Source: Podarcis tiliguerta | Taxonomy: Eukaryota | DNA: 64,000 nt | NCBI GenBank assembly: GCA_965153285.1 | Contig: OZ229115.1 | Reading direction: 5' to 3' (one strand) | Part shown: positions 23,501 through 64,000 of the stretch, one piece after another | Layout: every line of letters begins with the position of its first letter | Position numbering within the stretch: the stretch's first letter is position 1 | Made by a program: the position numbers and the translations under genes | Notes under the pieces: model-generated | What the model was told of the DNA's origin: nothing | What the model saw: only the letters and a program-made list of their open reading frames with translations | Database searches by the model: none

Positions 23501-26500
23501 GAGGTGAAGTGTGAAGCGGCCAGAGTACCACTGCAAGCCAAAAGAGCTTCTGTCCTTTCTTCTGAAAGGCCTCTTCATATTCTAGGCTCTTTAGAGCAAG
23601 TCTTCAGATATCATTAACAGGCAGCAGTTGACACTTCAGAACACCATTCAGTAGCAGATAATCCTTATCTTGAACAAAATATCCCATGACAAATCAGACT
23701 GTTCAGAAGTTTCTCCCTAGACAATTCAGAAAAGTATTCTACTTAGGAAGCATGATGGGATGCTTCCTGGAAATTGAAATAATTCATTTCTATATTTATA
23801 GAGCAGCTGTGTTGAGTCAGTACATTTTTTAGTTTAATTTTGTTTCACCCAAACTGTTCTAGTTCAGTTCATTAATGGATCACTTATCCAATGGGAAGAA
23901 TATGACAATACTGATTTGCATAACTGCTTGAAGCATGTTCAGGGTCAAAATAGTCACTAAAATAGTAATTTTACAGAACCGCACTCATTAGTATTCATGG
24001 TACTTTACACAGCAGTTAAACCATTTTGATATCTTTTTTTAAAAAGAAAATGAAAAACAGGAAGGCAAGGAGAAAGGTTTCTAAGTGGCGTGATGATATC
24101 TGAAAGAACTGTATGGAACTTTCAGGAACTGATTTCGGTGTGAGAACTCAAATGCGGATTGTGTAAAGGAAGATATACCTGAGCATGTGCAAAGTACCTA
24201 TATTCATCACTGAGCAAACATATACTGCAGCAAACACTGAGGATCAAAAAGTGCATGTCAAGGTGAGCACCAACATCTATCTTTTTTAGGAGATGACCTC
24301 ATTTAGCCACTATGCAAACTCCTGGTAAAAACTCCCAGAGCAACTTCAGTCTTAGTCTATTGCAGCTAAAACAAAGAGGCTTATAGCACCTTAAAGTCTA
24401 ACCAATTTATTATGGCATAAGCTTTCATGGTCTGGAGTCCATTTCATAAGTTGCTGCTGGGACTGTTATCCTCACTTGACAGATACATATACACACTGGG
24501 GCATACAAGAGAGAAAATATAAATAGGTGGGCTAAAAAAAGCCAATAATTGCAAACAGGTGGAATACAGTCCTGTTCTTCTTCAGCTTTGGTTTTGCAGG
24601 TTGCTGCTGATCTGAAAGCTGCCACTCTCTATTAGAAGTAATTCAAAAAGAAATCTAGCATGAAATAGAAGAATTAGAACTAATAACTATATTTGATTTT
24701 GTTTGCCCTGTTTGGCAAGTTTAATTCTGTTGGTATATACAAAATGGTTCTCTCTCCCACTACAGGTATTAGCAACGAGAAGTTGATTCTGTTAAATAAC
24801 TTATAACCAATACCTGCTGCTGTGAATAGTCACTACTTGTTTGACAGATTAAAAGCTTTACTGAATTTTCAGACTGTACCTTTAAATTTCTTTGCCATTT
24901 TATTCCCACGGCTGAGGATTTTCCCCATATTTTATGTTTGCAGTAATATTCCTCATTTTGATTCATGCTGACAATGCTACTTACCTGAAGTCGGGGATTT
25001 TCTCTGCTAAGCCAAAGTCACCAACTATAGCAGAATATCCATTCTCATCATGCTTTATCAAACAGTTCTGAATGAAAAGAAGAGGGGAATTAGTGTGGTC
25101 CACATTTGAATCCCACCATTAAAAACTTAAAACTAGGAAGCAAGGCAAGTAAGAGTGTGTGTTATATGGTATCCCACCCTTCATCAGAAGCGATCTCGAG
25201 ACAGCTCACAAAATTAAATATACAATCAACTAACAAACCATTAATCATAGTAACTAATCCATCTGTCAGGTATTACAAGGAACACCTTTCATTGTAATGC
25301 AGGCACATGCACCACAAATTTAAGAGGCCTGGCTGAAGAGAAAAGTCATTAGCTGGTGCATAAATATAGACACGTATGCACCAGGTGAAGTTCTGAGGGG
25401 AGCGAATGTACCACAAATGGAGTGCTCTTGCCAAGACCCTCTGGTGCATCATCTTGTGACTTCAGTCAGCAATGGCACTGCCAGAGGAGCCTCCAACCAC
25501 AAAGTCTGGCCAGAACAATATGGGGTGTTTCTTCAGATAATCAGGCCCCTATTATGCCATTTAGGGGTTTGTGTGTCAGAAATAAAACTCTGAAATTGGC
25601 CTGGTGGCCAATAGGCAGCCAAGTGTATGTATTTGAGGACTAGTTATACAGTCCTAGGCAAATATACCTACTAAAACTCTGGCTTCTGCAATCTCCAGAT
25701 ATGACTGATCTGAAGATCAGCCAAAGCTACTGCTCATAATTTTTTTAGCAATCTGTTCTGGTTTACTATACAGTTTGACTGGGGAAAAGAATGTCCACCC
25801 CAATTCTAAATATGCAACAGTTACCTGAATAATTACCCAATAGCACAGGAACATTTGGGAGGCTAGAGAAACGAGGAGTGCGATTCTATGCTTGCTGAGT
25901 CAGACGTAAGCCGCATTACATTCAGGAGGCTTACTCCCAGGTAAGTATGTATTGGATTGCAGCCTAAGGCTCCACTCTTAAGCATGCTTATTAGGGAGCA
26001 ATCCCCCTTGAACACAGTAGGAATTCTCAACAAGTATACAACCGCACCATAAGGCTGGAAATTCTATTCACATTTGGGAACAAATCATACTGAACCCAGC
26101 AAGATTTCTGAGCAAACACATCTAGGAATGAGTTCCAAGCAGAACAAGGAACAAATATGATACATTCGGCTCTTGTGCTGTTTGATATCTTTAAGCGAAA
26201 TCATTGCTAGATTCAGTTCATGGATTATTACTACTATGAATTATAATTTCTAGGTTTACACTGCATTTAGGCTGTAGTTTAAGCACAGTGTTAATTCTTT
26301 CCCCCCCCCCCCTTTTACTGATTTTAAGATCTCAGGTAGAACATTAATTTGATATTTCAATTCAGAACATTTTTGGGATTTTGCTTTTTAAAATAGATCA
26401 CTACATACATTTAATCTATTTTAAAATTTAAAAATAACTTGCTTCCAATGTCTGCAAGCCACTGTCAAGTCTCACTTAGCCAAAATCTTGTAGGTTAACT

Positions 26501-29500
26501 AGGACTGTGAACTGTAGTCTTTAATGGATTTGGAGAGCAATGACCACATCATTACAATGATACTTAACTGTCAAAGACAAGGAGCAGATGGGGGAAATTA
26601 AGCATTCTGGTCTGTGTACTGTTCTCTCTAATGTACTGATGCCTCTGGCACTGGCCACTGTTAGCCTTTCATTATAAAATGGAAGTATAGTAAAGTTATG
26701 TTCTGTTTTAGTTTTGTCCAGTTTAATTTTTTGCACAACTGCATCGCCCACTGTGCATAACACACACATCCATGTTAACAGCAGGCAGCAGTGACTTTAT
26801 GGACGTCTCTTGAGTTGTAACCTGCAAAACCAGCAAATAAATTCAGGTACTTGCCTGCTCATAAAAAGAGCAGATAGGAAAGGGGAGGGGGAGGAAGGGA
26901 GAGGTCTCAGATCTTCATTGTACTTCTCTCATGGACACACAGAGATTCCTGTTTGATTCCTAGGTCCCAATTAATATTTATTTTATTTTAACCTGGATCA
27001 GTTATAGCACACACAGCTCACTTTGAGTTTTAAAAAATTGCACAAGGTCAACTGAATCAGGCCAACCCAACACACACTAAAGCTTCTCAATTATGGCCTT
27101 TGTTATCTCTCGTCAAAGAATGCATTCATTCAGCTTGCTTGTGGTAAACTATTTGTTCACTGCAAAATGCAGCTAAATCCTAGAGGGATAACATTAATCA
27201 TACAGCAATGTTAAAACCACGATGAAAATTCAGCAGTTGGTGTAGAAGTAACCATATGTTGGGCAGCAGCCATTTGATAATGCTAGGGTTCTTTTTTGGT
27301 GCTTCATATGGCAAGTAATTTTTCTACCTACTTAAGAAGCTTTTAGTATAATACAATGAAATCAAGCTTTCTCTGACAGTTTATGAACTTTCAAACTATA
27401 TGCCCTGAATACAGAGTTGTATTTCTCAAAAAAAAATATGTTGCTGCTCAGTGAGTGGTTGCTATTCATTTGCTTTCCTGCATTAGCCTTCAATATTTTG
27501 TTCCTTAAATGTAAACAATGCATGAGAGGCATATCTTATTGTCCAAACTTTTACAAGTATTCCAATAAGAATAACTGCTTTGAATTTGTTTGAAGATAAC
27601 TTCATGTCAAACTCTGCTTGAGATACCCTTTTCAATCATTATGGCACCTACCCACAGTTTGTCTCCTAACCTCATTCCTATTCATTATCTCGCTCAAAAA
27701 CTTCCCTTTTCCTGTTCTCTCTAAATTTGCTGCCCCTTCACCCCAATAAGTATACCTTACTGTAACTAAGTCAAAGTGTGTGTAACTGAAACCACCGTGT
27801 TCTTCTCTGCCTGCATTTCCCTCCCACTTCCTCTGTTTTTCCTGTGTTTATTTTAGAATGCTATTTGTAAAGCATCGTGTTTTACCTGAACCAGTGGGTT
27901 CAAATTACAAGAAAGGAGATTCCAACTAATCATTAGGAAGAACTTTCTGACAGTAAGAGCTGTTCAACAGTGGAAAGGCACTACATCAGAAGGGAAAGGG
28001 ACTCTCTTTCATTGGAAGTGTTTAAATCTACCTGTCAGCTATTTATTAGCTGCAATTCCTGCATTTGCAGGACTAGGTGATCCTTTGGGTCTCTTTCAAC
28101 TCTACAGATCTATGATCTATGTGTACATAGGTAAGTCCCATAGAGATTTTTTTTTAAAAAAACCCAATTTTAAGCCATATTAATTGTGCTTTATTTAGTT
28201 TCTTCTCTAATCAAATTTCAGCTCAAATACTAATATGTATTGAGACCCGAATTAACACGGGCAATCTGCTAAATCAGATAACACTACAAGGACATCGGAA
28301 AATTATTCCAGAAAACCCACATCACTGATTAGCCAAGCTGTGCTCTACAAGGCAACTGTGGGTAATTCTTATAGATATGTCCCTGGATTGAGCTTCACAG
28401 AAGGTCTCTGGGAAACTTTTTAATTATATTTATTTTGATAAAGAGAAGGCAATCAGACTGGGAACCAATGGTCACATTCACTCAGAATACTCACTGTCAA
28501 CTATAACATCCCTGAAAATAAGTATTTATTATGAATTTAATTCTTGGTTAGTAGTAAGGAGTGACAGTCTAGCAATAGGTTTTGGATGGAATTGTATTCC
28601 CCTTGAGGAAAAAACCAAACAGGTTTGCTACCATACTGTTTTCATGCAAAATTCAAAGTCATTGTCTTTAAAACCCTATATGTTTCAGTCCAGGATATTT
28701 AAAGGACTGCCACCTGCCCTACTTTAATCTTGCCTGTCCACTGAGGTCAATGAGGTGCTTTTTGTATGTCCAATCACCCATCACCATCTGAAACATGGTG
28801 GTTGGGACTAGCACTGCTCTATTTATCTAGCCCAGTACCCTCTACCCTGACTGGTCTTGCACAGAGGCTTTTCACAGGCTGGAGGTGCCAAGGATTGAAC
28901 ATGGAATATTCTGTATGCAAATATTGCACTCCACCACTGAGCTACGGCCCCTCATTATGCAGATTCAAATTCTGTGGAATGTATTGCTACATTGCATGTA
29001 TAAAAAAGTCCAATAATACATGATCAAATCTCTCTGTGGAGACTTCCCCAGAGATACAATTCTGGAAGTTTATACAACCTGAGTTATTCCTTAGGCTGAA
29101 ATCTTCACTTAAAGAAGCTGAAACTGAGCTCCAAAGAGTTAACAAATGTTTATACATAAACAGATGTGAGTGAACATAAAGCTCCTTTTGTGTGTTGAGA
29201 GAGCTTAACATCTGCTTTGCACAGTGTAATCCTGCTAAGGAAGTTCAACATTTATTTTCTTCTCGCATAAGAAAAGATATCCACTAGCAATAGCTTGTTC
29301 AGGCCCAATGCAGTTTCCATTACTTTTCTTTGTGCTGCTGAAAGCAAAGAAGGATTGCTTTATATTCAGACATGTTACCACAGTTTCCTTCACATTAGCT
29401 AAAACAGCCAAATGGGACAATATGATCCTGCTACTGTCTTAATGGTTACATACAACTTTTACAGTATTGCTAAAGAAATCCATGTCTGCTAAATGAAGTC

Positions 29501-32500
29501 ATTTAAGAGACTCAATTTATGCTGAAAAGTGTGATATAAACTCCCTCTCTCTCTATATATATTTATAAACAAGAGAGAGTTCAGACAATTTTGCACTGTA
29601 AAGGTTTGTCTCAGACAAACAGATTTATCTAAAAACATTAACAGGTAAGAAATGCATCCTCACAATAACTCATTGTCTCCTGCTTCTCATCCTTTTTCAT
29701 TATTCCTTTCTGCCAACTTGAAGGTTTTACAAGCAAACTATCTAAATCCAAATATAAAGTTCACTAGCTTAAATAGCAATTCCATAAATCAAAGGAAGGC
29801 AGTAAAAAGGCTAGCATAAAAAAAATATGATGAGTAGAATTGTTACCATTTAAGTAACATTGGTATTTCTATTTTAGGATTTTTAATTTTAGGATTATGG
29901 AGCTTTTGTACTACTCTGGCTTGTCAAACTTGAAAATCTTGAAAACTTTTCAAGAAGCATAATGGCAACATGGAAATCTACTCCTCATTCTCCACAGTGC
30001 TCTCAGTATATTTTGCATTTAGACCAGGGTGCAGGGAAGAACCTTTGGTCATTAGTCTGATAAGGATCCCAAAATGGTCCACAAGGATGTTTTCATAAAA
30101 AAAAACCCTGAGCTGTCTGTCTCTCCTTGTAAGCTTCATGCATGTGCATCTGGCTGGAAAGCATACAAGCAAAAATGCTACTATTTTTCAAATGAGGAAA
30201 AGAACTGGACCCTCAGCCAGAGCTTCTGTGCTTCACAGAATGCCTCTCAGGCTGTGTTTAAAAGCAAAGAAGAAATGGTGAGAAATGCAAATATTTTAGC
30301 TGTTCAACACAAGTCCTTTGTGATACTGATAAAGATGTTCAACCATTAGGGGCTTTGCTGGGCTTAAATATAAAACCTCTTAGGATCCTACCTAGAAAAC
30401 ACGAACAAGTCAGATAGATACTGGCAAAGGAGGTTTGCAGTGCAATCCTAACCACGCCTACCCAGAAGAAAATCCTATTGAATTAAATGGGGCTTTCTGC
30501 CAGGAAATAGAACTGCTAGTACATTTGCAAAGCTAAGCAGGTCTGCTTTGGTTTCAAAGTGGATGGGGGATTGCAAGGTGAGGTTCCTGCCTCTCAGAGG
30601 GTTGGAACAGATTGCCCGCGGGGTCCCTTCTAACTCTACAATTCTATACCCCATACCTGTGATGTCAAGTATGCAGCAGGTAGGCACACAGCAGCCAACA
30701 AATGATTTGGAGTGTGCTCCCAGTTGTTCCTTGGCAAGTGAGGATTGGTGCTGCTGAAAGAACCAATTACTTTGTATTCCCAGCTTGAATTCAAGCAGGT
30801 GATTCAAATGATTTTAATCTACTGGCATGGCTCAAGCCATGGTGGCAAAGGAAAATAATTACTCTGCGTCATCTGATGTCATGTTGAAGTCATGTAATTT
30901 GGTAATTTGAGGGGACAGCTCCACCCAGCTGTCAAATTGGTCTGCAGGGGATGGGGGGGGGCTGCCAAAATGGCCCACCAGCTGCTAAAGCTTCCCTGCC
31001 CCTGATTTAAAGGGTTCAAAAAGGTTGCACATATGAATACATTATAGTGTTGTAATTCTAACTATCTATAAAGGTAGATATCATCATAGTACAAATGGGG
31101 AGAGGGGTCAACATTGAGAGGATGTAGCTTTTTTAAGGCTACCTAGTGAGTTCAGGGCTGATTCAAACGGGAGAATTCATCGTTTGTATCTCAATCACTT
31201 AAATAGTAAGATAGAGTGAAACCACAGGCAACACTAACAGGAATTATGATTTGCTCACCAATATTGTAACACCAAACAATTTTACACTATTATGTGATAT
31301 CAATGCAGCCTAAGTGCTGTTGTACTAAAGCTTCTCATCTTAGTGTTTCAGGCATAACCTAATTACTTTCAAGGCTCACACAACTCTTCAGCCATAAGTA
31401 TACCACCTGTTAATATTTGCCCTCCATTTGAATTAGTTTAAAAAAGACCACAGTTCAGTTATAAAAATCAGTATACTGAAGTCTGGAAATACTCATATAA
31501 ACAGAAGATGTGGCATTTGGGATGCTTTGCTTTCCAAGAACAGAGACAGTAACTCTTTATTCCATTTTGTCCCATCTCCCCAGAGTTGGCAGACTATTAA
31601 AGTGCATCCCAGCTGGTCATTTGCAGTTTTGGCATGAGAACCTTCACCGTAACTCGGCATTTTACCTATGGCACACTTAAAAAACCACTATCACTATTTT
31701 TTAATCATTAGCTGTTTATAATAGTGTTGTTTATGAATTAGTGCCAAAACAACAGATAATCGTCAAGGTGATAAATTTCTGATTGCTTTCCTCACCAGTT
31801 TGCAATTACAATGGGACATTTATAAGGAAAGAAATGATTTTCATATTACTAGCTGCAATGTTAAATAGTCATAATGACACGGCATCCTGAAAAGCAAAGT
31901 TTATGCAATTATTTGTAGCCCTGTTTTATGCATCAGTTGAAGAGTTGCTGGAGTAAAACTACTACCAGCTTAGTGTTGCTCTGTAGCAGTTTAGGTCACC
32001 TGTAGAACAATGTTGAATGTATCTGAAGTTATGGGGAACATTTAAATATACAGCAATAAACCTTTAAGAAAGTAGGGTGGGACACAGAGACAAGTCTGTA
32101 TGTCTGCATCTTTTTGTAGTTTTATATTATAAAATGTGTAGCAGCTGGATCCCTAGGCTTTGGGAAGTAGAAGTTTGAATAACTTGCTGCGAACAAATTA
32201 AAGAAGTTGTGCAACCACCTTCCCAGGCACATAATCCTAACTCATTTATTTGTGACCTCTACTTCAGGTTAGTTTCTTCTCAGACATCTACACAACATGA
32301 GTTGTTCTGGGAAAGTTTAATCCACTAAACTATGTTTTCAGTGTTTTTTCACAATCTTTTAAAGTGACATTTTACGTAACAGTTTTACAGTTTGAGGCAC
32401 TGAGTGGGGCTGGAGAAAAGTAAAACTACGCAAGATTGTTTGTAGTTCGCTAAGTAATACACGTCTATTGCCAAATGGTTTCATTTGATAGGGACGCATG

Positions 32501-35008
32501 GTACCTTGGATGTCAGATCCCGATGGAAAATGCCTTTATAGTGAAGGTAAGTGAGTCCCAGAGCAATGTCCAGTGCCAGCTTCACCCTTACTGTCCAAGG
32601 CAGGTGTTGATTACCATCCAACAGCTGTTCTAGGTTACCACAGTTGATATACTGAAAATATATTTTAAAAAATTAAAAAGAAAAGAAAAGAACCACAGTT
32701 AAACTTCAAAGTACAGACAGGTGAGGAATTTCTTCTTGGATTTAGTGGGGCAAATGTAAGTTCCTCCAACTGTATTAATGATATACTAACTCAAACCAAA
32801 CAATCATAAAAGTAAATAATCTATTAACTTTAAGATTGGTAGGTGAATGCATCCCCAATAACTCCTGGACATCCTCCTTGTTGGCATCCATCTATCTTGA
32901 GAGACAATGGAGAGTGCGTCCAGGGGTGAAGACAAACTGCTGTGTTAGCAGTACAGAAGTAACTTTCCAGTGTGTATGGAGGTCCTGAGCTGCCCAGACA
33001 GACAAGACCCCCTCCCCTGGCCTCACTGACGTGGTCCAAAGGAAAGCAGAGCAATATGTTTGGCACAAGCTAGGCTGCCTCAGTTGCTGGTAGGAGGGCA
33101 TACAAGGTGCCATCCAACAGTCTTAGGGACCCCATTTGGGATATGTTTAGAAACCACCTTCTTGACCCGTTTTTCATGAATGCACAGGAAACTGTCAAGG
33201 CTGAGTCAGACCTTTGGTCCATCTAGCTCAGTATTGTTAACAGTGACTGTCAGTGACTCTCCAGGGTTTCAGCCAAGGGACATTCTCTCTTTTTCCAATT
33301 TTTTTTTATTAGTTTTCCACAAAATGTTTAAACACGCAAACAAATAAACAAACAATCATAAATCCTAACCTTATTAAAACTAATCTTATTAACATTGCCA
33401 AGCGACTTCCTCGTATCCCCTTGGTTGAGTTTCAGTGTATATCATTTTAAAGGTTTTCCAAAACCTATATTCTCATAAAATTAACTTAGTCACTTAACAT
33501 CTTTCTTTCTTTCCCAATCTAAATTTCAACATAGTAATTTATCACATTACATACTTAAGTCCTAAGCCTATCTGGTATTTGCAAGCCTTTCCAATTAATT
33601 TAACTTAACATATTTAACTAAATAGTCTTTAAATTTCGTCCATTCTTCCTGGTAATCCTCCTCCCTCTGGTCACGGACTCTTCCAGTCAGGTCGGTTAGC
33701 TTCGAAAAATCCATCATCTCAGCCAAGGGACATTCTCAGCCCTACCTAGACAAGCCAGGGATTGAACCTGGGCCCTTTAGCATGCAACACACGTGCTCTG
33801 CTACTGAGCTATGACCCTTCCCTAAAGCACAGTATACACCAAAAGAGGAGGAAATGACAACTGGAAAGAGGTAGTGCAGACAAAACAACTGATAACTGAG
33901 ACATCATCCTAGATTTCAATTAACATGGTGAGTTTTTGCCAGCAGGTGGTGGCATGAAGTAATTCAAGGTTCTCCTCTCTCCCTGTATTTCTACTATAAA
34001 AAGAGTTCTCATGTAGTAGATTTCTAACTGCTAAACACCACACACTGTAGTGCAATATTTCTGCAAGTCAGCCCAGACTTCAGGCTTGTAGAGAAGTACT
34101 ATCAAATAAGTCCCACTTGTTAAACTGCAAGAGCTGAAGAAATTCATGTGCACAAAGAATAAATATACAACATTCATTCTATATTTGCACCCCTTTTTAA
34201 ATACAATGAGACCAAAAATTTATATCCAAGTGGGATTACTTTAACACAAACCAGTGACCCAGCAACTGTATCATCCACTGAGCTACAAATCAAAGAACTG
34301 TTAATTTCTAGCTGTCCAGAATACTTGAGGATCTAAAGAGGATCAAAACGAAGTGTTCCTTGGCTAGATGCCAAACTACTTGGCCCAGATTTTAGGAGCC
34401 AGCTCAAGTTTCTCAACATATTATGCCAGGAGAGTTCAAGGCCACCCCACAAGAAAGTGCAGTTGTTTACCACTTGTGGACCAGGACTAGGTTATGTACC
34501 GATTTCCACTACAAGCAAATTAATTGTGCATATTAACACAGATTGCCCTTTGGAAGCAACAGTTATATGCCCCAGGCAAATGCAAGTTTCTGATGCAGCA
34601 AAAATTAGTCTTCCAGTATCCACTGTGCATGCGTCGTTACTGACATAATTAAAAGAGAGGTGCCCATGAACATACATGTAGGAAATATATTCCGATGGTA
34701 CATGATAACAGTCTTGCACGCACTCTGCTCTATTCTGTTTGTCAGGTCATTATTTGAATTCTATTAATTTTATTCAATTTATGAGTCATCCAGTAATGCA
34801 GCAACTTGCTTAGGAACAAAGGAAGCCGCCTTTTATTGAGGGAGACCCATCAGCCCATCTAGAACATTTGCCAGTCAGATACTCTCATGGACAACCTTCT
34901 GTGGGCCACATGATAGTGGTGCATAGGGCCAGTGGCAAGAACTGGGTGCAGCAACGGATGTGAATCTTTACCTTCGTTCAACCACACAAACATCAGAAGT
35001 CAGTCAGC

Positions 35009-41000: not shown

Positions 41001-44000
41001 CCTTTCTTTACAAGAGCTCCTGAGCCACCGTTGTGGTGTTCTATGGAGAGCAAAAAAGTAAGAAATTTGACAAAATTATCAACTTTGACTTTCTCTTTAG
41101 CCTTCAAACTATAGGAAGACAATCTCTAGGTGAAAAGCGAAGAGTCTCCTCAATTTCACCATTCCCCACACCTAACAAAAGCAAACTACAGCTAAAGAAA
41201 TTCTATCAATTTTTCAAGCACATGAAAATGACAATATTCCCCACTGTAGAATCTACATTGCTCCTCCCTGGACTTTTTAGCTTGGTGAGGCAGCTAAGAC
41301 CTTAACCACAATCCTGGTTTGGATGCCAAGTAAAAGCTTGGCTTAGCTATTCCAGTGTGCTAAAAATCTCGGAAAAGCAAAGCAGGTGCAAACTTCTCTC
41401 CAGAAGCATGTACACTCTGTCCCAATAAGTTACACATTTGCTTCTAGTTTGTATATATGCATTAAGTGCCCTACCCTCCTTGCACAATGTTCTGCAAGGA
41501 CTTTAGACTGAAAACAACTGCTGGATTTGGAGGGCATAGGAAGCATTTCCTATTGAATATTCTCAAAGCGTAACATCTGTAAAGCATCATTAAGAACAAA
41601 AGATCAAATGGGAGAATGGTTAACCACAGGGGATGGAGTCCACTCAAAACAACGCCACAGAATTCATTGCAATCACACTTTGATGCCTCCAGGTGCAATA
41701 TAGTTTACAGAATCAGTGGGATGTGACTATCCTTACTGTCTTAGCACCCTTCTCTAATTTCTGATTTTGCAGAAGTTCTGTAACCACTGAGAGGGATTTT
41801 CAGCTCAATAGAGCATGCACTTAGGAAGTGGTATTGATGGTTCAATGGTTCAAACATAGCTTTTGTAGTTTTCTGTCTCTAGTGGTGCCAAACTAAGTGA
41901 CAAACTAGACATGGTAACAGTAGATCAGTGTTTAATCCAGATTTGTCCCAATCATTTAGGAAGAGGGAGTGAGGGGAGGTATATGATCCCATGAGCAGAT
42001 GGCATGTATGCAAAAGCTGTTTGACCCTTCTTGCAATCTGAACTCAGCTGTTGAAAAGGCTTGGGAAGGAGGACAATATGGAAGTAAGTGGGAAAGGGGG
42101 AAGGGAGAGATCTATATTCTTCACCCACATACCCCTCTTCTGTTAAAACCAGTCTCTATTCGCTTTCTAATAGTGTGGCTCCAGGTTTAAACAAGCAGCC
42201 TGGGAGGGTGGGTGTGTTAATATTGATCAGAAAATAACTGAAAGAAATAGCCTCTCCCTCACCTGTCCTTCATTTAGGCTTTCATTCAACTAATTCCACA
42301 TTAATGTTTTTGGAAACGTATTACTGCAGTTGCTCTACATCCAGCTGAGGATTTCTAGTGCAGGATGGCAACATATGTGATTGGTTTGCTAGAAAACTAA
42401 TTTCTAAAGCAAGCAATTCAAAATAAGACTGACTGGTATCAGTCCTCCCTCCCTTCCCTTAAAGAACCAGATGTGCTAACTTCCTTCAAACATAAGCACA
42501 TGACCTCAAAATCTTTAATGTGTACAGACTCTCAAGCAGACATGTGAGAAAGAAGCCTGTAATACTTGATGTATAGCCATTCTGCGCTTCTACAGAACAC
42601 AAATCTGCAACAGTGCAAAGATGCGTTATTCAGTTTCAGAATTCCTTTAGCAAGTTTGCTACACTTCCTTGATATCTTTGTTGCTTGAGTGAAGGGCATC
42701 AACAGAATCCACATATATTTTCCAGAAGACTCCAGCTCAAAGAACAGATGTGAAATCTTGGACACTTGAAACTATGTTCATGTGCTAATCTTATGCTAGA
42801 TGCTAGATCTAACCCTTTTAGATCTCTAGTTCTGCATTCAAAATTCATTCAGAATTAATCTGTGTCTCACCTAAACAGGAATTGAAAGGAAGAAAAGATA
42901 TAGCATTCCTTTAACTATCTTGGGTTGTATCCAACTAAATACTTGTGCACGTGGGACAGCTTCATAAGAACTTCCTCTCCCCTTCCTCCTGCCGCACATA
43001 CCCCATATCTGCTCCAAGGGTTTTCTCAACCCTCCAGTGCAAAACTGGAGGTGATATGAGGGGGCAGGCAGAGGAGAGGGAGAGGAAGCTCTGTTGCATG
43101 CACAGAACTTCTATGAGCACAATTTTTTTGTTGAACAAAACCTGTTTTGAATCCAAGATGTTTCTTAACTAGCAACATAAAAACAACCAGTGCTAATGCA
43201 ATAGAGTTTATATATGCTTTTAAATAATATTCCTGCTCTGAATTATTGAAGGCAAGTAGCTGAATTAATGACACTTGCTTTCATACGAATAACATTAGAT
43301 GTGGCACAAGATGAACAAACTACAAGTGTGTTCTGACTTCTGGAGAATGTCCTTTTAGATTAAAAGCTGCAGTTCGTGACCAAGCCTGCCTTTTAGAAAC
43401 CAATGTTGTTTTCCATCTCCCTATTAATGACATCCCACTCAAATTTATAAAGCAGCATAGGAATTAAATTACTTGAACACCAGAGATACTCTTAACACAT
43501 CCTTTCTTATATTCTACTTTGGCAAGGAAGGGCTGTGAAATTTAAATATAAACTACAATAATATTAAAATGTGAACTAGAGTATATTAGAAGTTCTATAG
43601 GTGTGGTAGTAGCATAGTATGCAATGACTTAAGCAATGACTTGGTCTCCTACTTGATTCTAATAAGGAATGTGTCAGTGAAAATTAAGAGGCCTGATTAT
43701 AGAACCCTTACAATTAAGACTTGCATTCAATTATACTGGAATGTTTGGCTAAACATAGAATCATAGATTTGGAAGGGACCCCGTATGTCATCTAGTCCAA
43801 CCCCCTGTAATACAGGATTCTCAACTAGATTATACATGACAGGTGGCCTCCCAGCCTCTGCTTAAAAACCTCCAAGGAAACAATGTTTCTAGGGACAATT
43901 ACAGATAACCCAACTAGTTCAAGGGAAATACATATGATAAATAGCTTGGTACTTTATACAGTCATACCTCAGTAAGGGCATGCAGTTGTCCTTGATGTAC

Positions 44001-47000
44001 ACAGACGCCCATAAACCTATAAAACAGGAGTAAACAGCTTCTTAAAATGGGAAACAGACAGTGCATTTTGTCAACTTTAAAACAAGTTACCAGTGAATCT
44101 GACTCATTATGTTAGTAGCTGCTGCTTTAAAAATACAAATCACTAAGTATATTAGTTTCTGTCTAGCACTAGTATACTGAACCAATGTAGTTGAAGACGG
44201 GGAGTAGATTTCTAAATTCTGCCTATTCCTAAACATTTGTAGGATTTGGGGTGAGGACAATACTAACAGACACAACGTTTTACATTCATACATACAGAAA
44301 AAGTTTGGTGTAGAGAAATCAATGCTGTGTCTTAAAGTAGAAATGGACATCTTAACAAAGTGTATGTTTGGCCTGGCCTTAGCAATTGTCTAGCTAGATT
44401 TTATATCTACCTGGACGTTAGTATTGGTATACAAAATCTGGATTATGAGAACAGCAATGAAGATACCACCAAATGTTATCACACTGCCAGAAAAGACCAA
44501 CAAATAAACTGATAAGTTTTCTATTCATTTAAAATATAGATTCCACATGCCATAAAGGCTTAGGAATCGAATTGTTTACAGTTCATCTCATAACTGCAAA
44601 ATGTTATCAGTTTTAAATATGACTTTTATGAAAGTACCTTTGAGTTCTGTCATGACATTGAGCTATGTCATAACTCAAAATGGAACAATAGTTTAATTTT
44701 TAGTGTGGGGCAACTCTGGGACTTTATTTAGCATAAGAAGAAGTGAAAATGCACAATTTCAAAAATAAAGACCACAAGATGCCTGACAAAAGGAATACTG
44801 TAAAACTGACTTATGGAAAGTGTTCATTTATATATATTTTTAAGTTCTGTATGTTGCAAGAAACATGCGGTAGAATGTAAGCTGCTTTTGAGTAAACTTT
44901 CAGTACTCTTACCTATTAAGTGGTGGGGGGGGGGGGTTACAGGGATAACTTCATAAAGAGTTGAAGGAAAACAAGCAAATAAGCCTTCAGCTATGAAAAT
45001 CTGTTTGTGTTAATAGAACAATAAATTAGGCTCATTTTTTTCTTATCCAATATACAACGTTCTGCCTTCAAATGAAATAAAGCATAAAGAATGAAGCTAC
45101 TTCGGACATTATAGCACATGGAATCACACATGATAACTAACCAGCAAACTGACTGTATGGCAACTATGCCGCTACCTGAAGGCATATCAGAGTATTTAAA
45201 AGGAAAGGAAGTTATAGAACACAAACCTCAGAACCACATAAAAAATATAAAAAAAGCTTGACAACACATTTTTCACCTTCAAAATGTAACTTGTGAAAAT
45301 AGCAAGTGCTGACCATGAGTGAAAGCTATGACATCTCATGCTTTACTTTTTCAGCATTCCTAAAGTAAAAAAGATCCAGGATCCATTAAAACCCACTTTA
45401 TTTCGCGTAGTGGAGCAGAAACAAAGTCTGAAAATAATCCAGTTCCTAGTTTAATGAAAACGTGTTAGCACCAGCACTCCTTGTTGCCCTTCACTGCTGT
45501 TGTCCCACTAATTTTTGTGCATTTCCTATGCATACATACTCCCTCTTCTTGGAAAAAAAAGTCTTGTGTCCCCCCGCACCTTAAAAAAAAGCACCACTCC
45601 CAACAGAGCACATACCTATTTATTTATTTTTTATTTTCTTGCATTTCTATCCTCCCTTCTTCATGGAACTCAAGGTAGCATACGTGTGGTTTCCAGGCAG
45701 TCACCTATCCAAGTATTTACACTCATACACATACCTATGCAACAACATGCCAAGTGGGGAGGAGGAGAATCTTGAGGCAGGACTATTCAAATATGTTTAT
45801 GTAAGATGGAAATTTATATTTACCCATTCCCCTCTGTAGATGCCTCTGTCCATTTGCATTAACAAACAAACATGGAACTGGAAACCCCATGTTGGCTTCG
45901 ATTCCACCCTAGCCTCACAATTTTTGAGAAGAGCTGTGGTTCAGTTAAAAGGAGCTGCATGCAGAAGGGCCCAGGCTGAAATCCTGAAGAGCTGCTATCA
46001 GGTCTGACTCAGCATTAAGGCAGTATCCTATGTTCCTAGTTCCCAAAAGTGCAGTGCTAAGCACTTGAGTAGCATTGCACAGAGTCAGCCGTTGGAAATC
46101 AGGAAATTAGACAAGTTGCACTTCATTCATATGAACAGTTCTAGTTAACAGAAGTCACAAAGCTCAAAGTATACAGGTGCAATTGTAATCCCATTTTATA
46201 AACTCATTTGTACGAATATATTTTCCCCGTTTTCTCATTTAAATACAGGTTTAAATGGAACTGCATAAAATATTTCCTATGGAAATGATATGCTATAAGA
46301 AAGATAGATGTTTAGAGACTTCAGGAGCTTGTCACTATCAAAGCAGTTGTTTAATCATGCTAGAAAAAGAATACTGATTTAAAAGATGACAGTGGAGTCC
46401 TAATCATTTGCATGAGTATTTCTGGTCAAAATGCCAGTCATCACCACAACACATGTAGTAATATTATGTTTTGCAATGCTCTATTTGTGCAAAATAATTG
46501 CACTGTACTGTAACAAATATTCCACAACAAGCACTACCTCAAATATCATTTCAGAGGGGTTTCATTTAAATTTACAACCACTTTGTAAAACTGCACACTG
46601 CTATGTCTCACCCACCTCAAAGTCTTTGAGCTCTGTTCAATGCTCGAATCACTACTTCACACAGGCACAATGCAAATTAAGATTTAAACAACTAATATTT
46701 GTAAAAATAAATTACATTCTTCGGTGGCATGCAATATAAATAAAAGTCTCCCTGCATAAGTTTAAACACCGTTACCCATTTTAACATAAAGAATATAAGC
46801 CAATCCTCTTGTGCTCCCCTATGCAAAAGTGATTTATACATTTATAGTACATAAACTTGCAGACACATCTGCTCAATTTGCATTTTATCAACTGCAGATG
46901 ACAGGGCAGCTGTATTCAGTTTTTACTCAGAGCAGTCCCACTGAAATTAATGGACCCATATTAGTTATGGTCATTAATTTCAAAAGGTTTATTCTGAGTA

Positions 47001-63877: not shown

Positions 63878-63879
<2 letters not shown>

Positions 63880-64000
63880 GTTTTCGTAGATTTTCACGGG
63901 TACAGGAATGCAGGTTTTGGTGTCCTCGGGTGTCTTCCCGTGTAAAAGTTGGGGTGTCTAGGCGACGTTTCGACGAGGTCTCACTCGTCATCTTCAGGCT
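63878..64000 (-). mobile_element. Penelope-like retroelement terminus (continues off the right edge)
   Basis: Abrupt CpG-rich sequence abutting (TA)n and carrying a minimal hammerhead motif. Confidence 0.7.
63961..64000 (-). ncRNA. Minimal type I hammerhead ribozyme motif
   Basis: AGC-CUGAAGA-U-GACGAG-UGAGAC-CUCGUC-GAAA-CGUC-GCC: complete catalytic core and a perfect 6-bp stem II. Confidence 0.75.

What the first reader, a model, noticed from the sequence alone, without database searches (positions are those of the whole stretch)
30110..30283. C-type lectin immune-receptor exon hidden antisense inside a TESK2 intron
Seen: an open 144-nt plus-strand exon with splice signals encodes C-x3-W-x2-Y-x3-CYYFS-x5-W-x2-S-x3-C-x4-A...EEM, ending at the phase-0 intron position typical of the first CTLD exon. 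Known: this is the signature of group V NK-receptor-type lectins (CLEC2/CD69/KLR), which normally sit in dedicated clusters and not in the MUTYH-TOE1-TESK2 block. The splice sites point to a DNA-level origin, not retrocopying. CA in place of the usual CP, ASQA in place of ASLA, and a phase-0 acceptor hint at decay. Inference: an unannotated nested lectin gene or pseudogene.
Basis: partly seen in the sequence, partly recalled or inferred. Interest (0 to 1): 0.8.

Follow-up and report, generated by a model that had tools for sequence, protein, structure and literature searches.

The report
Orphan lectin exon in TESK2 intron
An intron of a lizard's TESK2 gene holds one stray, apparently dead copy of the first lectin-domain exon of a lacertid CLEC2D-like immune-receptor gene, with no other exon of that gene in 64 kb, so it is a gene fragment and not a hidden gene.

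Summary
The + strand at 30098-30277 encodes 60 residues that match the first third of NK-receptor-type (group V) C-type lectin-like domains: CLEC2D 2e-10 in PDB, and E 1e-26 against a family HMM built here. The closest proteins are one lacertid CLEC2D-like gene (Zootoca vivipara, 76% identity; Podarcis muralis LOC114592787, 72%).

The reading as a nested gene does not hold.
- **No partner exons.** tblastn and the family HMM over all six frames of the 64 kb find nothing else: no membrane exon and no second or third lectin-domain exon.
The AG at 30132-33 is the conserved Lys codon of a P-C-K motif inside the ancestral exon, which starts about 30098.
- **Signs of decay.** At the ancestral start the site reads TA, not AG. 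The first codons are an A9 run that is 2 nt shorter in two sister species. A core Leu (L in 90% of relatives) is Gln.
- **A second copy exists.** Sister species carry this copy and also a roughly 87%-identical paralogous exon elsewhere.
- **Different chromosome, by indirect evidence.** The parent gene seems to lie on another chromosome.

No RNA run was available, so expression is untested. Verdict: an orphan pseudo-exon, ordinary, of low interest.

The parts
30098..30277 (+). Orphan copy of the first CTLD exon (60 codons, open) of a lacertid CLEC2D-like gene. It keeps C0, G-W, C0', Y, W and C1 of the lectin fold.
   Evidence: tblastn with P0012 residues 27-85 covers 30101-30277 at 76% identity, E 3e-28. 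The family HMM hits with E 1e-26 over HMM positions 58-116. PDB phmmer gives CLEC2D 2e-10.
30094..30106 (+). Position of the ancestral acceptor and the first codons. It reads c-a-t-a followed by an A9 run. There is no AG at 30096-97, and the A-run length differs among sister species.
   Evidence: Sequence. The parental exon start is placed at G-K-A-P-E by comparing Zootoca isoforms with and without the TM exon (P0280 vs P0012). A 2-nt deletion at 30098 is seen in organisms C and D (table 4).
30132..30133 (+). It is the last two bases of the Lys codon in the conserved P-C-K stalk motif, so it is coding by descent. It follows an A (AAG), which is a weak acceptor context.
   Evidence: alignments (PCKLHAC vs PCKVHAC).
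30248..30250 (+). CAG (Gln) at a core position that is Leu in about 90% of relatives.
   Evidence: Column counts over 327 aligned segments: L 293, Q about 1%.
30278..30283 (+). Retained donor-like GTGAGA right after the last codon of the exon. The sequence after it is not homologous to the next lectin exon.
   Evidence: tblastn and HMM alignments stop at 30277-30280.
24987..25076 (-). TESK2 exon flanking the host intron on the low side.
   Evidence: tblastn of Podarcis muralis TESK2 (P0160), residues 129-158.
43950..44018 (-). TESK2 exon flanking the host intron on the high side.
   Evidence: tblastn of P0160, residues 115-137.

Best explanation
This is a stand-alone, non-functional copy of a single exon: the first lectin-domain exon, with its donor site, of a lacertid-specific CLEC2D-like type II receptor gene (the lineage of Podarcis muralis LOC114592787 and Zootoca XP_034963088). 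It lies antisense in TESK2 intron 3.

Shown here:
- The homology itself.
- It is the only piece of such a gene in 64 kb.
- The same copy sits at the same place in at least three related species.
- A second, roughly 87%-identical exon exists elsewhere in their genomes.

Inferred:
- It split from the parent lineage before Zootoca and Podarcis diverged. It keeps an ancestral Glu where both parent orthologues share a derived Val.
- It arrived as a short DNA-level fragment rather than as a whole gene.
- It has drifted since. The acceptor is lost, the 5' codons have become a length-variable A-run, and a core Leu is now Gln.
- It does nothing beyond being intron DNA.

The broader claim, 'dead orphan exon, not a gene', I hold at about 0.85. 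The narrower claim, that it came as a fragment and was never a whole gene here, I hold at the confidence given below.
For: - **Identity:**
- **Lone exon:** tblastn with 11 full-length relatives finds nothing else below E about 0.2. An HMM built from 45 family proteins was run against 3423 stop-free pieces in all six frames. It gives one hit at 1e-26 and everything else at E>1.
- **Decay marks:** there is no AG at the parental exon start. There is a 2-nt indel in the A-run between sister species. Leu is replaced by Gln at a position that is 90% Leu.
- **Long own branch:** the window differs from Zootoca at 15 of 60 residues and from Podarcis at 17 of 60. The two functional orthologues differ from each other at only 6 of 60.
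- **Local assembly is real:** orthologous contigs of two other species are collinear over 27090-31163 (records 9-11, 13, 17-24).
- **Paralogue:** the contigs of organisms C and D break at 30196-30225. Extra contigs fit only 30107/30119-30225 with 15 mismatches (records 12, 21).
- **Parent elsewhere (indirect):** the parent gene is on a 124-127-Mb chromosome in Zootoca and Podarcis. Lacerta agilis TESK2 is on a 95.5-Mb chromosome. The P. muralis accessions of the two genes are about 12,600 apart.
- **No gene model:** no protein of 92-292 aa in the 5.8-billion set carries this version of the exon.
Against: - The 60 codons are still open and all fold-defining residues of this third of the domain are kept.
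- A good donor follows the exon.
- The relative-rate test against outgroup lectins shows no significant speed-up (few sites).
- The similarity to the paralogue seems to stop near the exon's 5' end. That could mean past selection on the exon, but 13% divergence lies at the aligner's 85% cut-off.
- Expression could not be tested, because no RNA run was on record.
Fragment versus whole-gene origin therefore rests on parsimony.
Confidence: 0.55

Rival explanations
1. It is the last remnant of a once complete duplicate lectin gene nested in the TESK2 intron. The membrane, stalk and second and third lectin-domain exons were later removed by deletions.
For: - Group V lectin genes duplicate often.
- The copy is old: it predates the Zootoca-Podarcis split and is shared by organisms A-D.
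- The donor site and a little flanking DNA came along with it, as in a DNA-level duplication.
Against: - The surviving exon is about 87% identical at the DNA level to its paralogue. Sister exons of the same age should still be easy to detect, yet none is found in 30 kb on either side.
- Losing every other exon while this one stays whole needs several separate deletions.
Confidence: 0.28
2. It is a live exon. On this reading it belongs to an unannotated gene or antisense transcript inside TESK2. Its other exons would be too divergent to recognise or would lie outside the window.
For: - The reading frame is open over 60 codons and the Cys/Trp framework is intact.
- A strong donor follows the exon, and an in-frame AG with a pyrimidine-rich run lies at 30132-33.
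- The contig piece covering 30196-30535 is, if anything, slightly less diverged between species than its neighbours: 2-3 changes in 340 nt against about 2%. This is not significant.
Against: - No further lectin-domain, stalk or membrane exon is found in 64 kb. Without them no lectin fold can form.
- The AG is a conserved Lys codon, not an inherited acceptor, and sits in a weak AAG context.
- A core Leu is replaced by Gln.
- A frame-breaking length difference lies in the first codons between sister species.
- No protein model or transcript-derived protein of 92-292 aa contains it.
- The one contig of organism A over it runs straight from exon into intron (record 6).
Confidence: 0.07
3. It is a fragment retroposed from RNA or carried in by a transposon, for example by transduction or capture.
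For: - The copy is exon-sized and lies on a different chromosome from the parent (inferred).
- High-copy repeats lie 300 nt downstream and 2 kb upstream.
Against: - The next exon's sequence does not follow 30277; a GT donor does, so the source was not spliced mRNA.
- The A-run lies at the 5' end of the sense strand and aligns with parental codons. It is not a poly(A) tail in either orientation.
- The DNA directly around the exon is single-copy in the relatives (table 2).
- The apparent 27975-to-30622 'joint' is an artefact of two separate copies of one repeat family.
Confidence: 0.08

Closest known systems
Lacertid CLEC2D-like gene (Podarcis muralis LOC114592787 / XP_077781326; P. raffonei XP_053234605; Zootoca vivipara XP_034963088/89)
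   Same: 72-76% amino-acid identity over the whole first CTLD exon, including the stalk motif P-C-K-x-H-A-C and the run [14 protein letters not shown]. The exon ends at the same place, after E-(D/E)-M.
   Different: Those genes have a cytoplasmic part, a membrane exon and a full lectin domain with Pfam PF00059. The window has only this one exon, without an acceptor, and by indirect evidence lies on another chromosome.
Mammalian group V C-type lectin-like receptors (CLEC2D/LLT1, NKG2D, CD69, KLRD1; solved structures 4QKG, 1HQ8, 1E87 and others)
   Same: The same N-terminal third of the long-form lectin-like domain: the first disulfide pair C0-C0', G-W, C-Y-Y-F-S, W and C1.
   Different: About 40-50% identity only. 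The rest of the fold is missing: the WIGL strand, the long loop region and C2-C4.
Duplicated gene fragments and pseudo-exons, as are common around NK-receptor lectin clusters
   Same: A partial copy of a parent gene, no partner exons, lost splice signal and drift-like changes.
   Different: It sits alone inside an unrelated housekeeping-type gene block (MUTYH-TOE1-TESK2), not beside its family. In the green anole the KLRG1, KLRB1 and CLEC2 genes lie together with NKC/MHC-type genes on chromosome 2 (PMC5002281).

Membership tests
C-type lectin-like domain, group V (NK-receptor type: CLEC2/CD69/KLR) | Significant sequence match to the domain | tested here: met
   PDB phmmer gives CLEC2D 2e-10, NKG2D and CD69. 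The family HMM gives 1e-26. The match covers only the first third of the domain.
C-type lectin-like domain, group V (NK-receptor type: CLEC2/CD69/KLR) | Complete domain: WIGL-type strand and cysteines C2, C3 and C4, encoded by a second and a third CTLD exon | tested here: not met
   There is no WIGL or WxWxDG motif in any frame. No tblastn or HMM hit to HMM positions 117-215 appears anywhere in 64 kb.
C-type lectin-like domain, group V (NK-receptor type: CLEC2/CD69/KLR) | Type II membrane protein: cytoplasmic and transmembrane exons upstream | tested here: not met
   The N-terminal and TM parts of P0019, P0280 and others give only noise in tblastn. Short TM exons are hard to detect, so this test is the weaker one.
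C-type lectin-like domain, group V (NK-receptor type: CLEC2/CD69/KLR) | Pfam Lectin_C (PF00059) above threshold | tested here: inconclusive
   No hit on the 48-aa or 97-aa pieces even at E 10. The fragment covers too little of the model. The full-length relatives do carry PF00059.
C-type lectin-like domain, group V (NK-receptor type: CLEC2/CD69/KLR) | Transcribed and spliced | not testable with these tools
   No run on record as RNA holds the stretch. The contigs laid look genomic.
Processed retropseudogene | Neighbouring exons joined without introns, and a 3' poly(A) | tested here: not met
   A GTGAGA donor and unrelated sequence follow the exon. The upstream sequence is unrelated to the TM exon. 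The A-run is at the 5' end and aligns to parental codons.
Duplicated gene fragment (orphan pseudo-exon) | Homology to a parent gene limited to part of it, with the parent intact elsewhere | tested here: met
   One exon only is found. Intact parent genes are annotated in three lacertids. A paralogous exon is seen in sister species' contigs.
Duplicated gene fragment (orphan pseudo-exon) | Signs of relaxed constraint | tested here: inconclusive
   For:
- lost acceptor;
- frame-breaking A-run indel between species;
- Leu replaced by Gln at a 90%-Leu site;
- 15-17 of 60 changes against 6 of 60 between the functional orthologues.

Against:
- the frame is open;
- the relative-rate test is not significant;
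- no nucleotide sequence of the parent was available for dN/dS.

The most novel reading that the evidence does not exclude
The orphan exon is not dead. On this reading it is used by a lacertid-specific + strand transcript antisense to TESK2. That transcript could be a truncated lectin-stalk peptide or a non-coding RNA that borrows the inherited donor site. It could also be a first step in an NK-type lectin gene settling outside its home cluster.
Probability: 0.05. Interest if true: 0.5.

Novelty: new member of a known kind. Interest (0 to 1): 0.15.

Why it matters
As it stands it matters little. It is one more stray gene fragment, useful mainly as a warning for annotation: a clean open exon with a textbook motif and splice-like signals is not a gene. 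It has small value as a dated marker, because it is present in several related lacertids. It also shows that pieces of fast-duplicating immune-receptor genes get scattered to unrelated chromosomes. Only if it proved to be transcribed and spliced would it bear on how NK-type lectin genes found new loci.

Tried and rejected
1. **Pfam scan of the exon:** no hit. Uninformative for a 48-97-aa fragment.
2. **Motif scan for WIGL, WxWxDG and C-terminal Cys motifs in six frames:** nothing lectin-like beyond the exon.
3. **Direct repeat 28389-28409 / 30227-30247:** I read the sequence and it is a chance 21-mer, not a second exon.
4. **Idea that a 2.6-kb block carrying the exon had been inserted into a repeat.** This came from the 'joints' 27975 to 30622. 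It is rejected. 27888-28125 is one complete diverged copy of a common squamate repeat, and 30590-30650 is the tail of another copy.
5. **Relative-rate test of the orphan exon against the functional orthologues, with seven outgroup lectins:** not significant, too few sites.
6. **Exon versus flank divergence between species, from contig mismatch counts:** no clear difference.
7. **The look-up of encoding contigs for the Zootoca and Podarcis genes:** The parent locus DNA, its intron-exon map and its neighbours could not be read.
8. **RNA evidence:** no RNA run was on record. The 'RNA?' runs of organism A behave like low-coverage genomic DNA.
9. **Earlier scan notes by sequence and by words:** nothing on a parent lectin locus in this genome.

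Full report
**What is there**

On the + strand the stop-free stretch 30056-30346 contains, from 30098 to 30277, sixty codons. They read a stalk motif (P-C-K-x-H-A-C) followed by SGW, KCYYFS, W and a further Cys, and they end in E-E-M. GTGAGA follows directly at 30278.

Each match falls at the start of the domain. A search of 1.84 billion representative proteins gives 930 hits. The two closest single-domain hits are 79% identical over that core. They are named CLEC2D-like in Zootoca vivipara and LOC114592787 in Podarcis muralis. Pfam's Lectin_C model does not fire on so short a piece. That says nothing either way.

**Where it is**

The window is lacertid. The last TESK2 exon is 98% identical to Podarcis muralis and 94% to Lacerta agilis. 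TESK2 runs on the minus strand from about 55.9 kb to 16.6 kb. The lectin piece lies antisense in the 18.9-kb intron between the exons at 43950-44018 and 24987-25076.

**Boundaries**

It begins 33-36 nt further upstream: [11 protein letters not shown] in the window against K-A-P-E-Q-P-V-P-P-C-K in Zootoca.

Zootoca isoforms with and without the 32-residue membrane exon place the parental exon start at G-K-A-P-E, which corresponds to window 30098.

At the ancestral acceptor position the window reads TA, and the first three codons have become an A9 run. In two sister species that run is 2 nt shorter (table 4). If those codons were translated, such a difference would break the frame.

**Is there a gene?**

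No. Eleven full-length relatives were searched against the window with tblastn at a very loose threshold. Only the one exon is found (E down to 3e-28). The next best alignments have E of about 0.2 or worse and are scattered on both strands.

I built an HMM from 45 family members of 150-290 aa and ran it with all filters off against all 3423 stop-free pieces of at least 12 residues in six frames. One piece scores 1e-26, over HMM positions 58-116. Everything else has E>1. At the preservation level of the surviving exon, sister exons would be unmistakable. There is no WIGL-type strand and no C2-C4 region, so no lectin fold can be encoded here.

The local assembly is not at fault. Contigs from two other species are collinear with the window from 27090 to 31163 (table 8).

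**Relation to the parent**

A word search restricted to this exon finds only five proteins of 92-292 aa in 5.8 billion. All are one gene lineage in Zootoca, P. muralis and P. raffonei, and none carries the window's version.

| Comparison over the exon | Residues differing |
|---|---|
| Zootoca vs Podarcis orthologues | 6 of 60 |
| Window vs Zootoca | 15 of 60 |
| Window vs Podarcis | 17 of 60 |

The window keeps a Glu, shared with outgroup lectins, where both orthologues have a derived Val. The copy therefore split off before Zootoca and Podarcis diverged, and it is a paralogue, not the local orthologue.

In sister species C and D the orthologous contigs break at 30196-30225. Extra contigs fit only 30107/30119-30225 with 15 mismatches (records 12 and 21). 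This is a second exon, about 87% identical, elsewhere in those genomes. It is probably the functional gene.

About thirteen per cent nucleotide divergence alongside 24-28% amino-acid divergence is what drift without selection gives. This is a rough estimate, because I could not see the paralogue's letters.

The parent gene sits on a 124-127-Mb chromosome in Zootoca and Podarcis, while L. agilis TESK2 is on a 95.5-Mb chromosome. The P. muralis accession numbers of the two genes are about 12,600 apart. This is indirect evidence that the copy moved between chromosomes.

**Decay or function**

For decay:
- No partner exons.
- Lost acceptor.
- Length-variable A-run in the first codons.
- Gln at a position that is Leu in 293 of 327 aligned relatives.

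The annotated Zootoca gene has the same Ala.

For function there is only the open frame and the intact framework residues. Drift would often leave both intact in 180 nt at this divergence.

A relative-rate test is not significant. Contig mismatch counts show no clear extra conservation of the exon over its flanks.

Expression could not be tested. No run on record as RNA holds the stretch. The low-coverage contigs of organism A scatter over the whole 6 kb, and one of them runs unspliced from the exon into the intron (record 6).

**How it got there**

It is not a processed retrocopy. A donor and unrelated sequence follow the exon, and the A-run aligns with parental codons at the 5' end.

It did not ride in on the repeats nearby. 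The 'joints' between 27975 and 30622 come from two separate copies of one repeat family.

I favour a short DNA-level fragment copied from the parent locus, for example as filler at a repaired break. A complete nested duplicate that later lost every other exon is the main alternative. Telling them apart needs the parent locus DNA and an empty site.

**Comparison with what is known**

Group V lectin-like receptor genes are type II membrane proteins, and their domain is split over three exons (established knowledge). In the green anole, KLRG1, KLRB1 and CLEC2 genes lie together with NKC/MHC-type genes on chromosome 2 (PMC5002281).

The window's piece is homologous to the first of those three exons. 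It fails every other membership feature of the family as a gene. It fits the ordinary category of duplicated gene fragments.

**Verdict**

This is a real, correctly recognised lectin exon, but an orphan and most likely dead. It is an unannotated pseudo-exon of a known kind, of low interest unless transcription and splicing are shown.

Noticed in passing
window 27888-28125, 30590-30650 and 32878-33089: Very high-copy squamate repeat fragments, with summed contig depth hundreds to more than ten thousand times that of the single-copy flanks in related species. The first two belong to one family, and its conserved tail ends in ...ccttccaactctacaattctat-like sequence. They cause false 'joints' when contigs are laid.
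   Followed up: partly
window 31290-32690: Almost no contig of sister species C or D lies here (depth 0 in most bins, traces up to about 12), yet contigs of the more distant organism A do (31890-32356). This could be a deletion in C/D or an effect of the read filter.
   Followed up: no
window 30196-30225: An exact 30-nt stretch (codons [10 protein letters not shown]) is shared between the orphan exon and its paralogue in species C and D. This breaks their assembly graphs at this point.
   Followed up: partly
protein P0016 (204 aa, species not looked up): A predicted lectin protein carries two first-CTLD-exon segments in tandem before one WIGL segment. Duplication of just this exon therefore happens elsewhere in the family.
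   Followed up: no
window 63878-64000: An earlier first-stage note (s1-827663) reports a minimal hammerhead ribozyme core in a Penelope-like element here. I did not examine it.
   Followed up: no
window 29539: An (AC)n microsatellite whose length differs between species (ACACAC inserted in species C).
   Followed up: no
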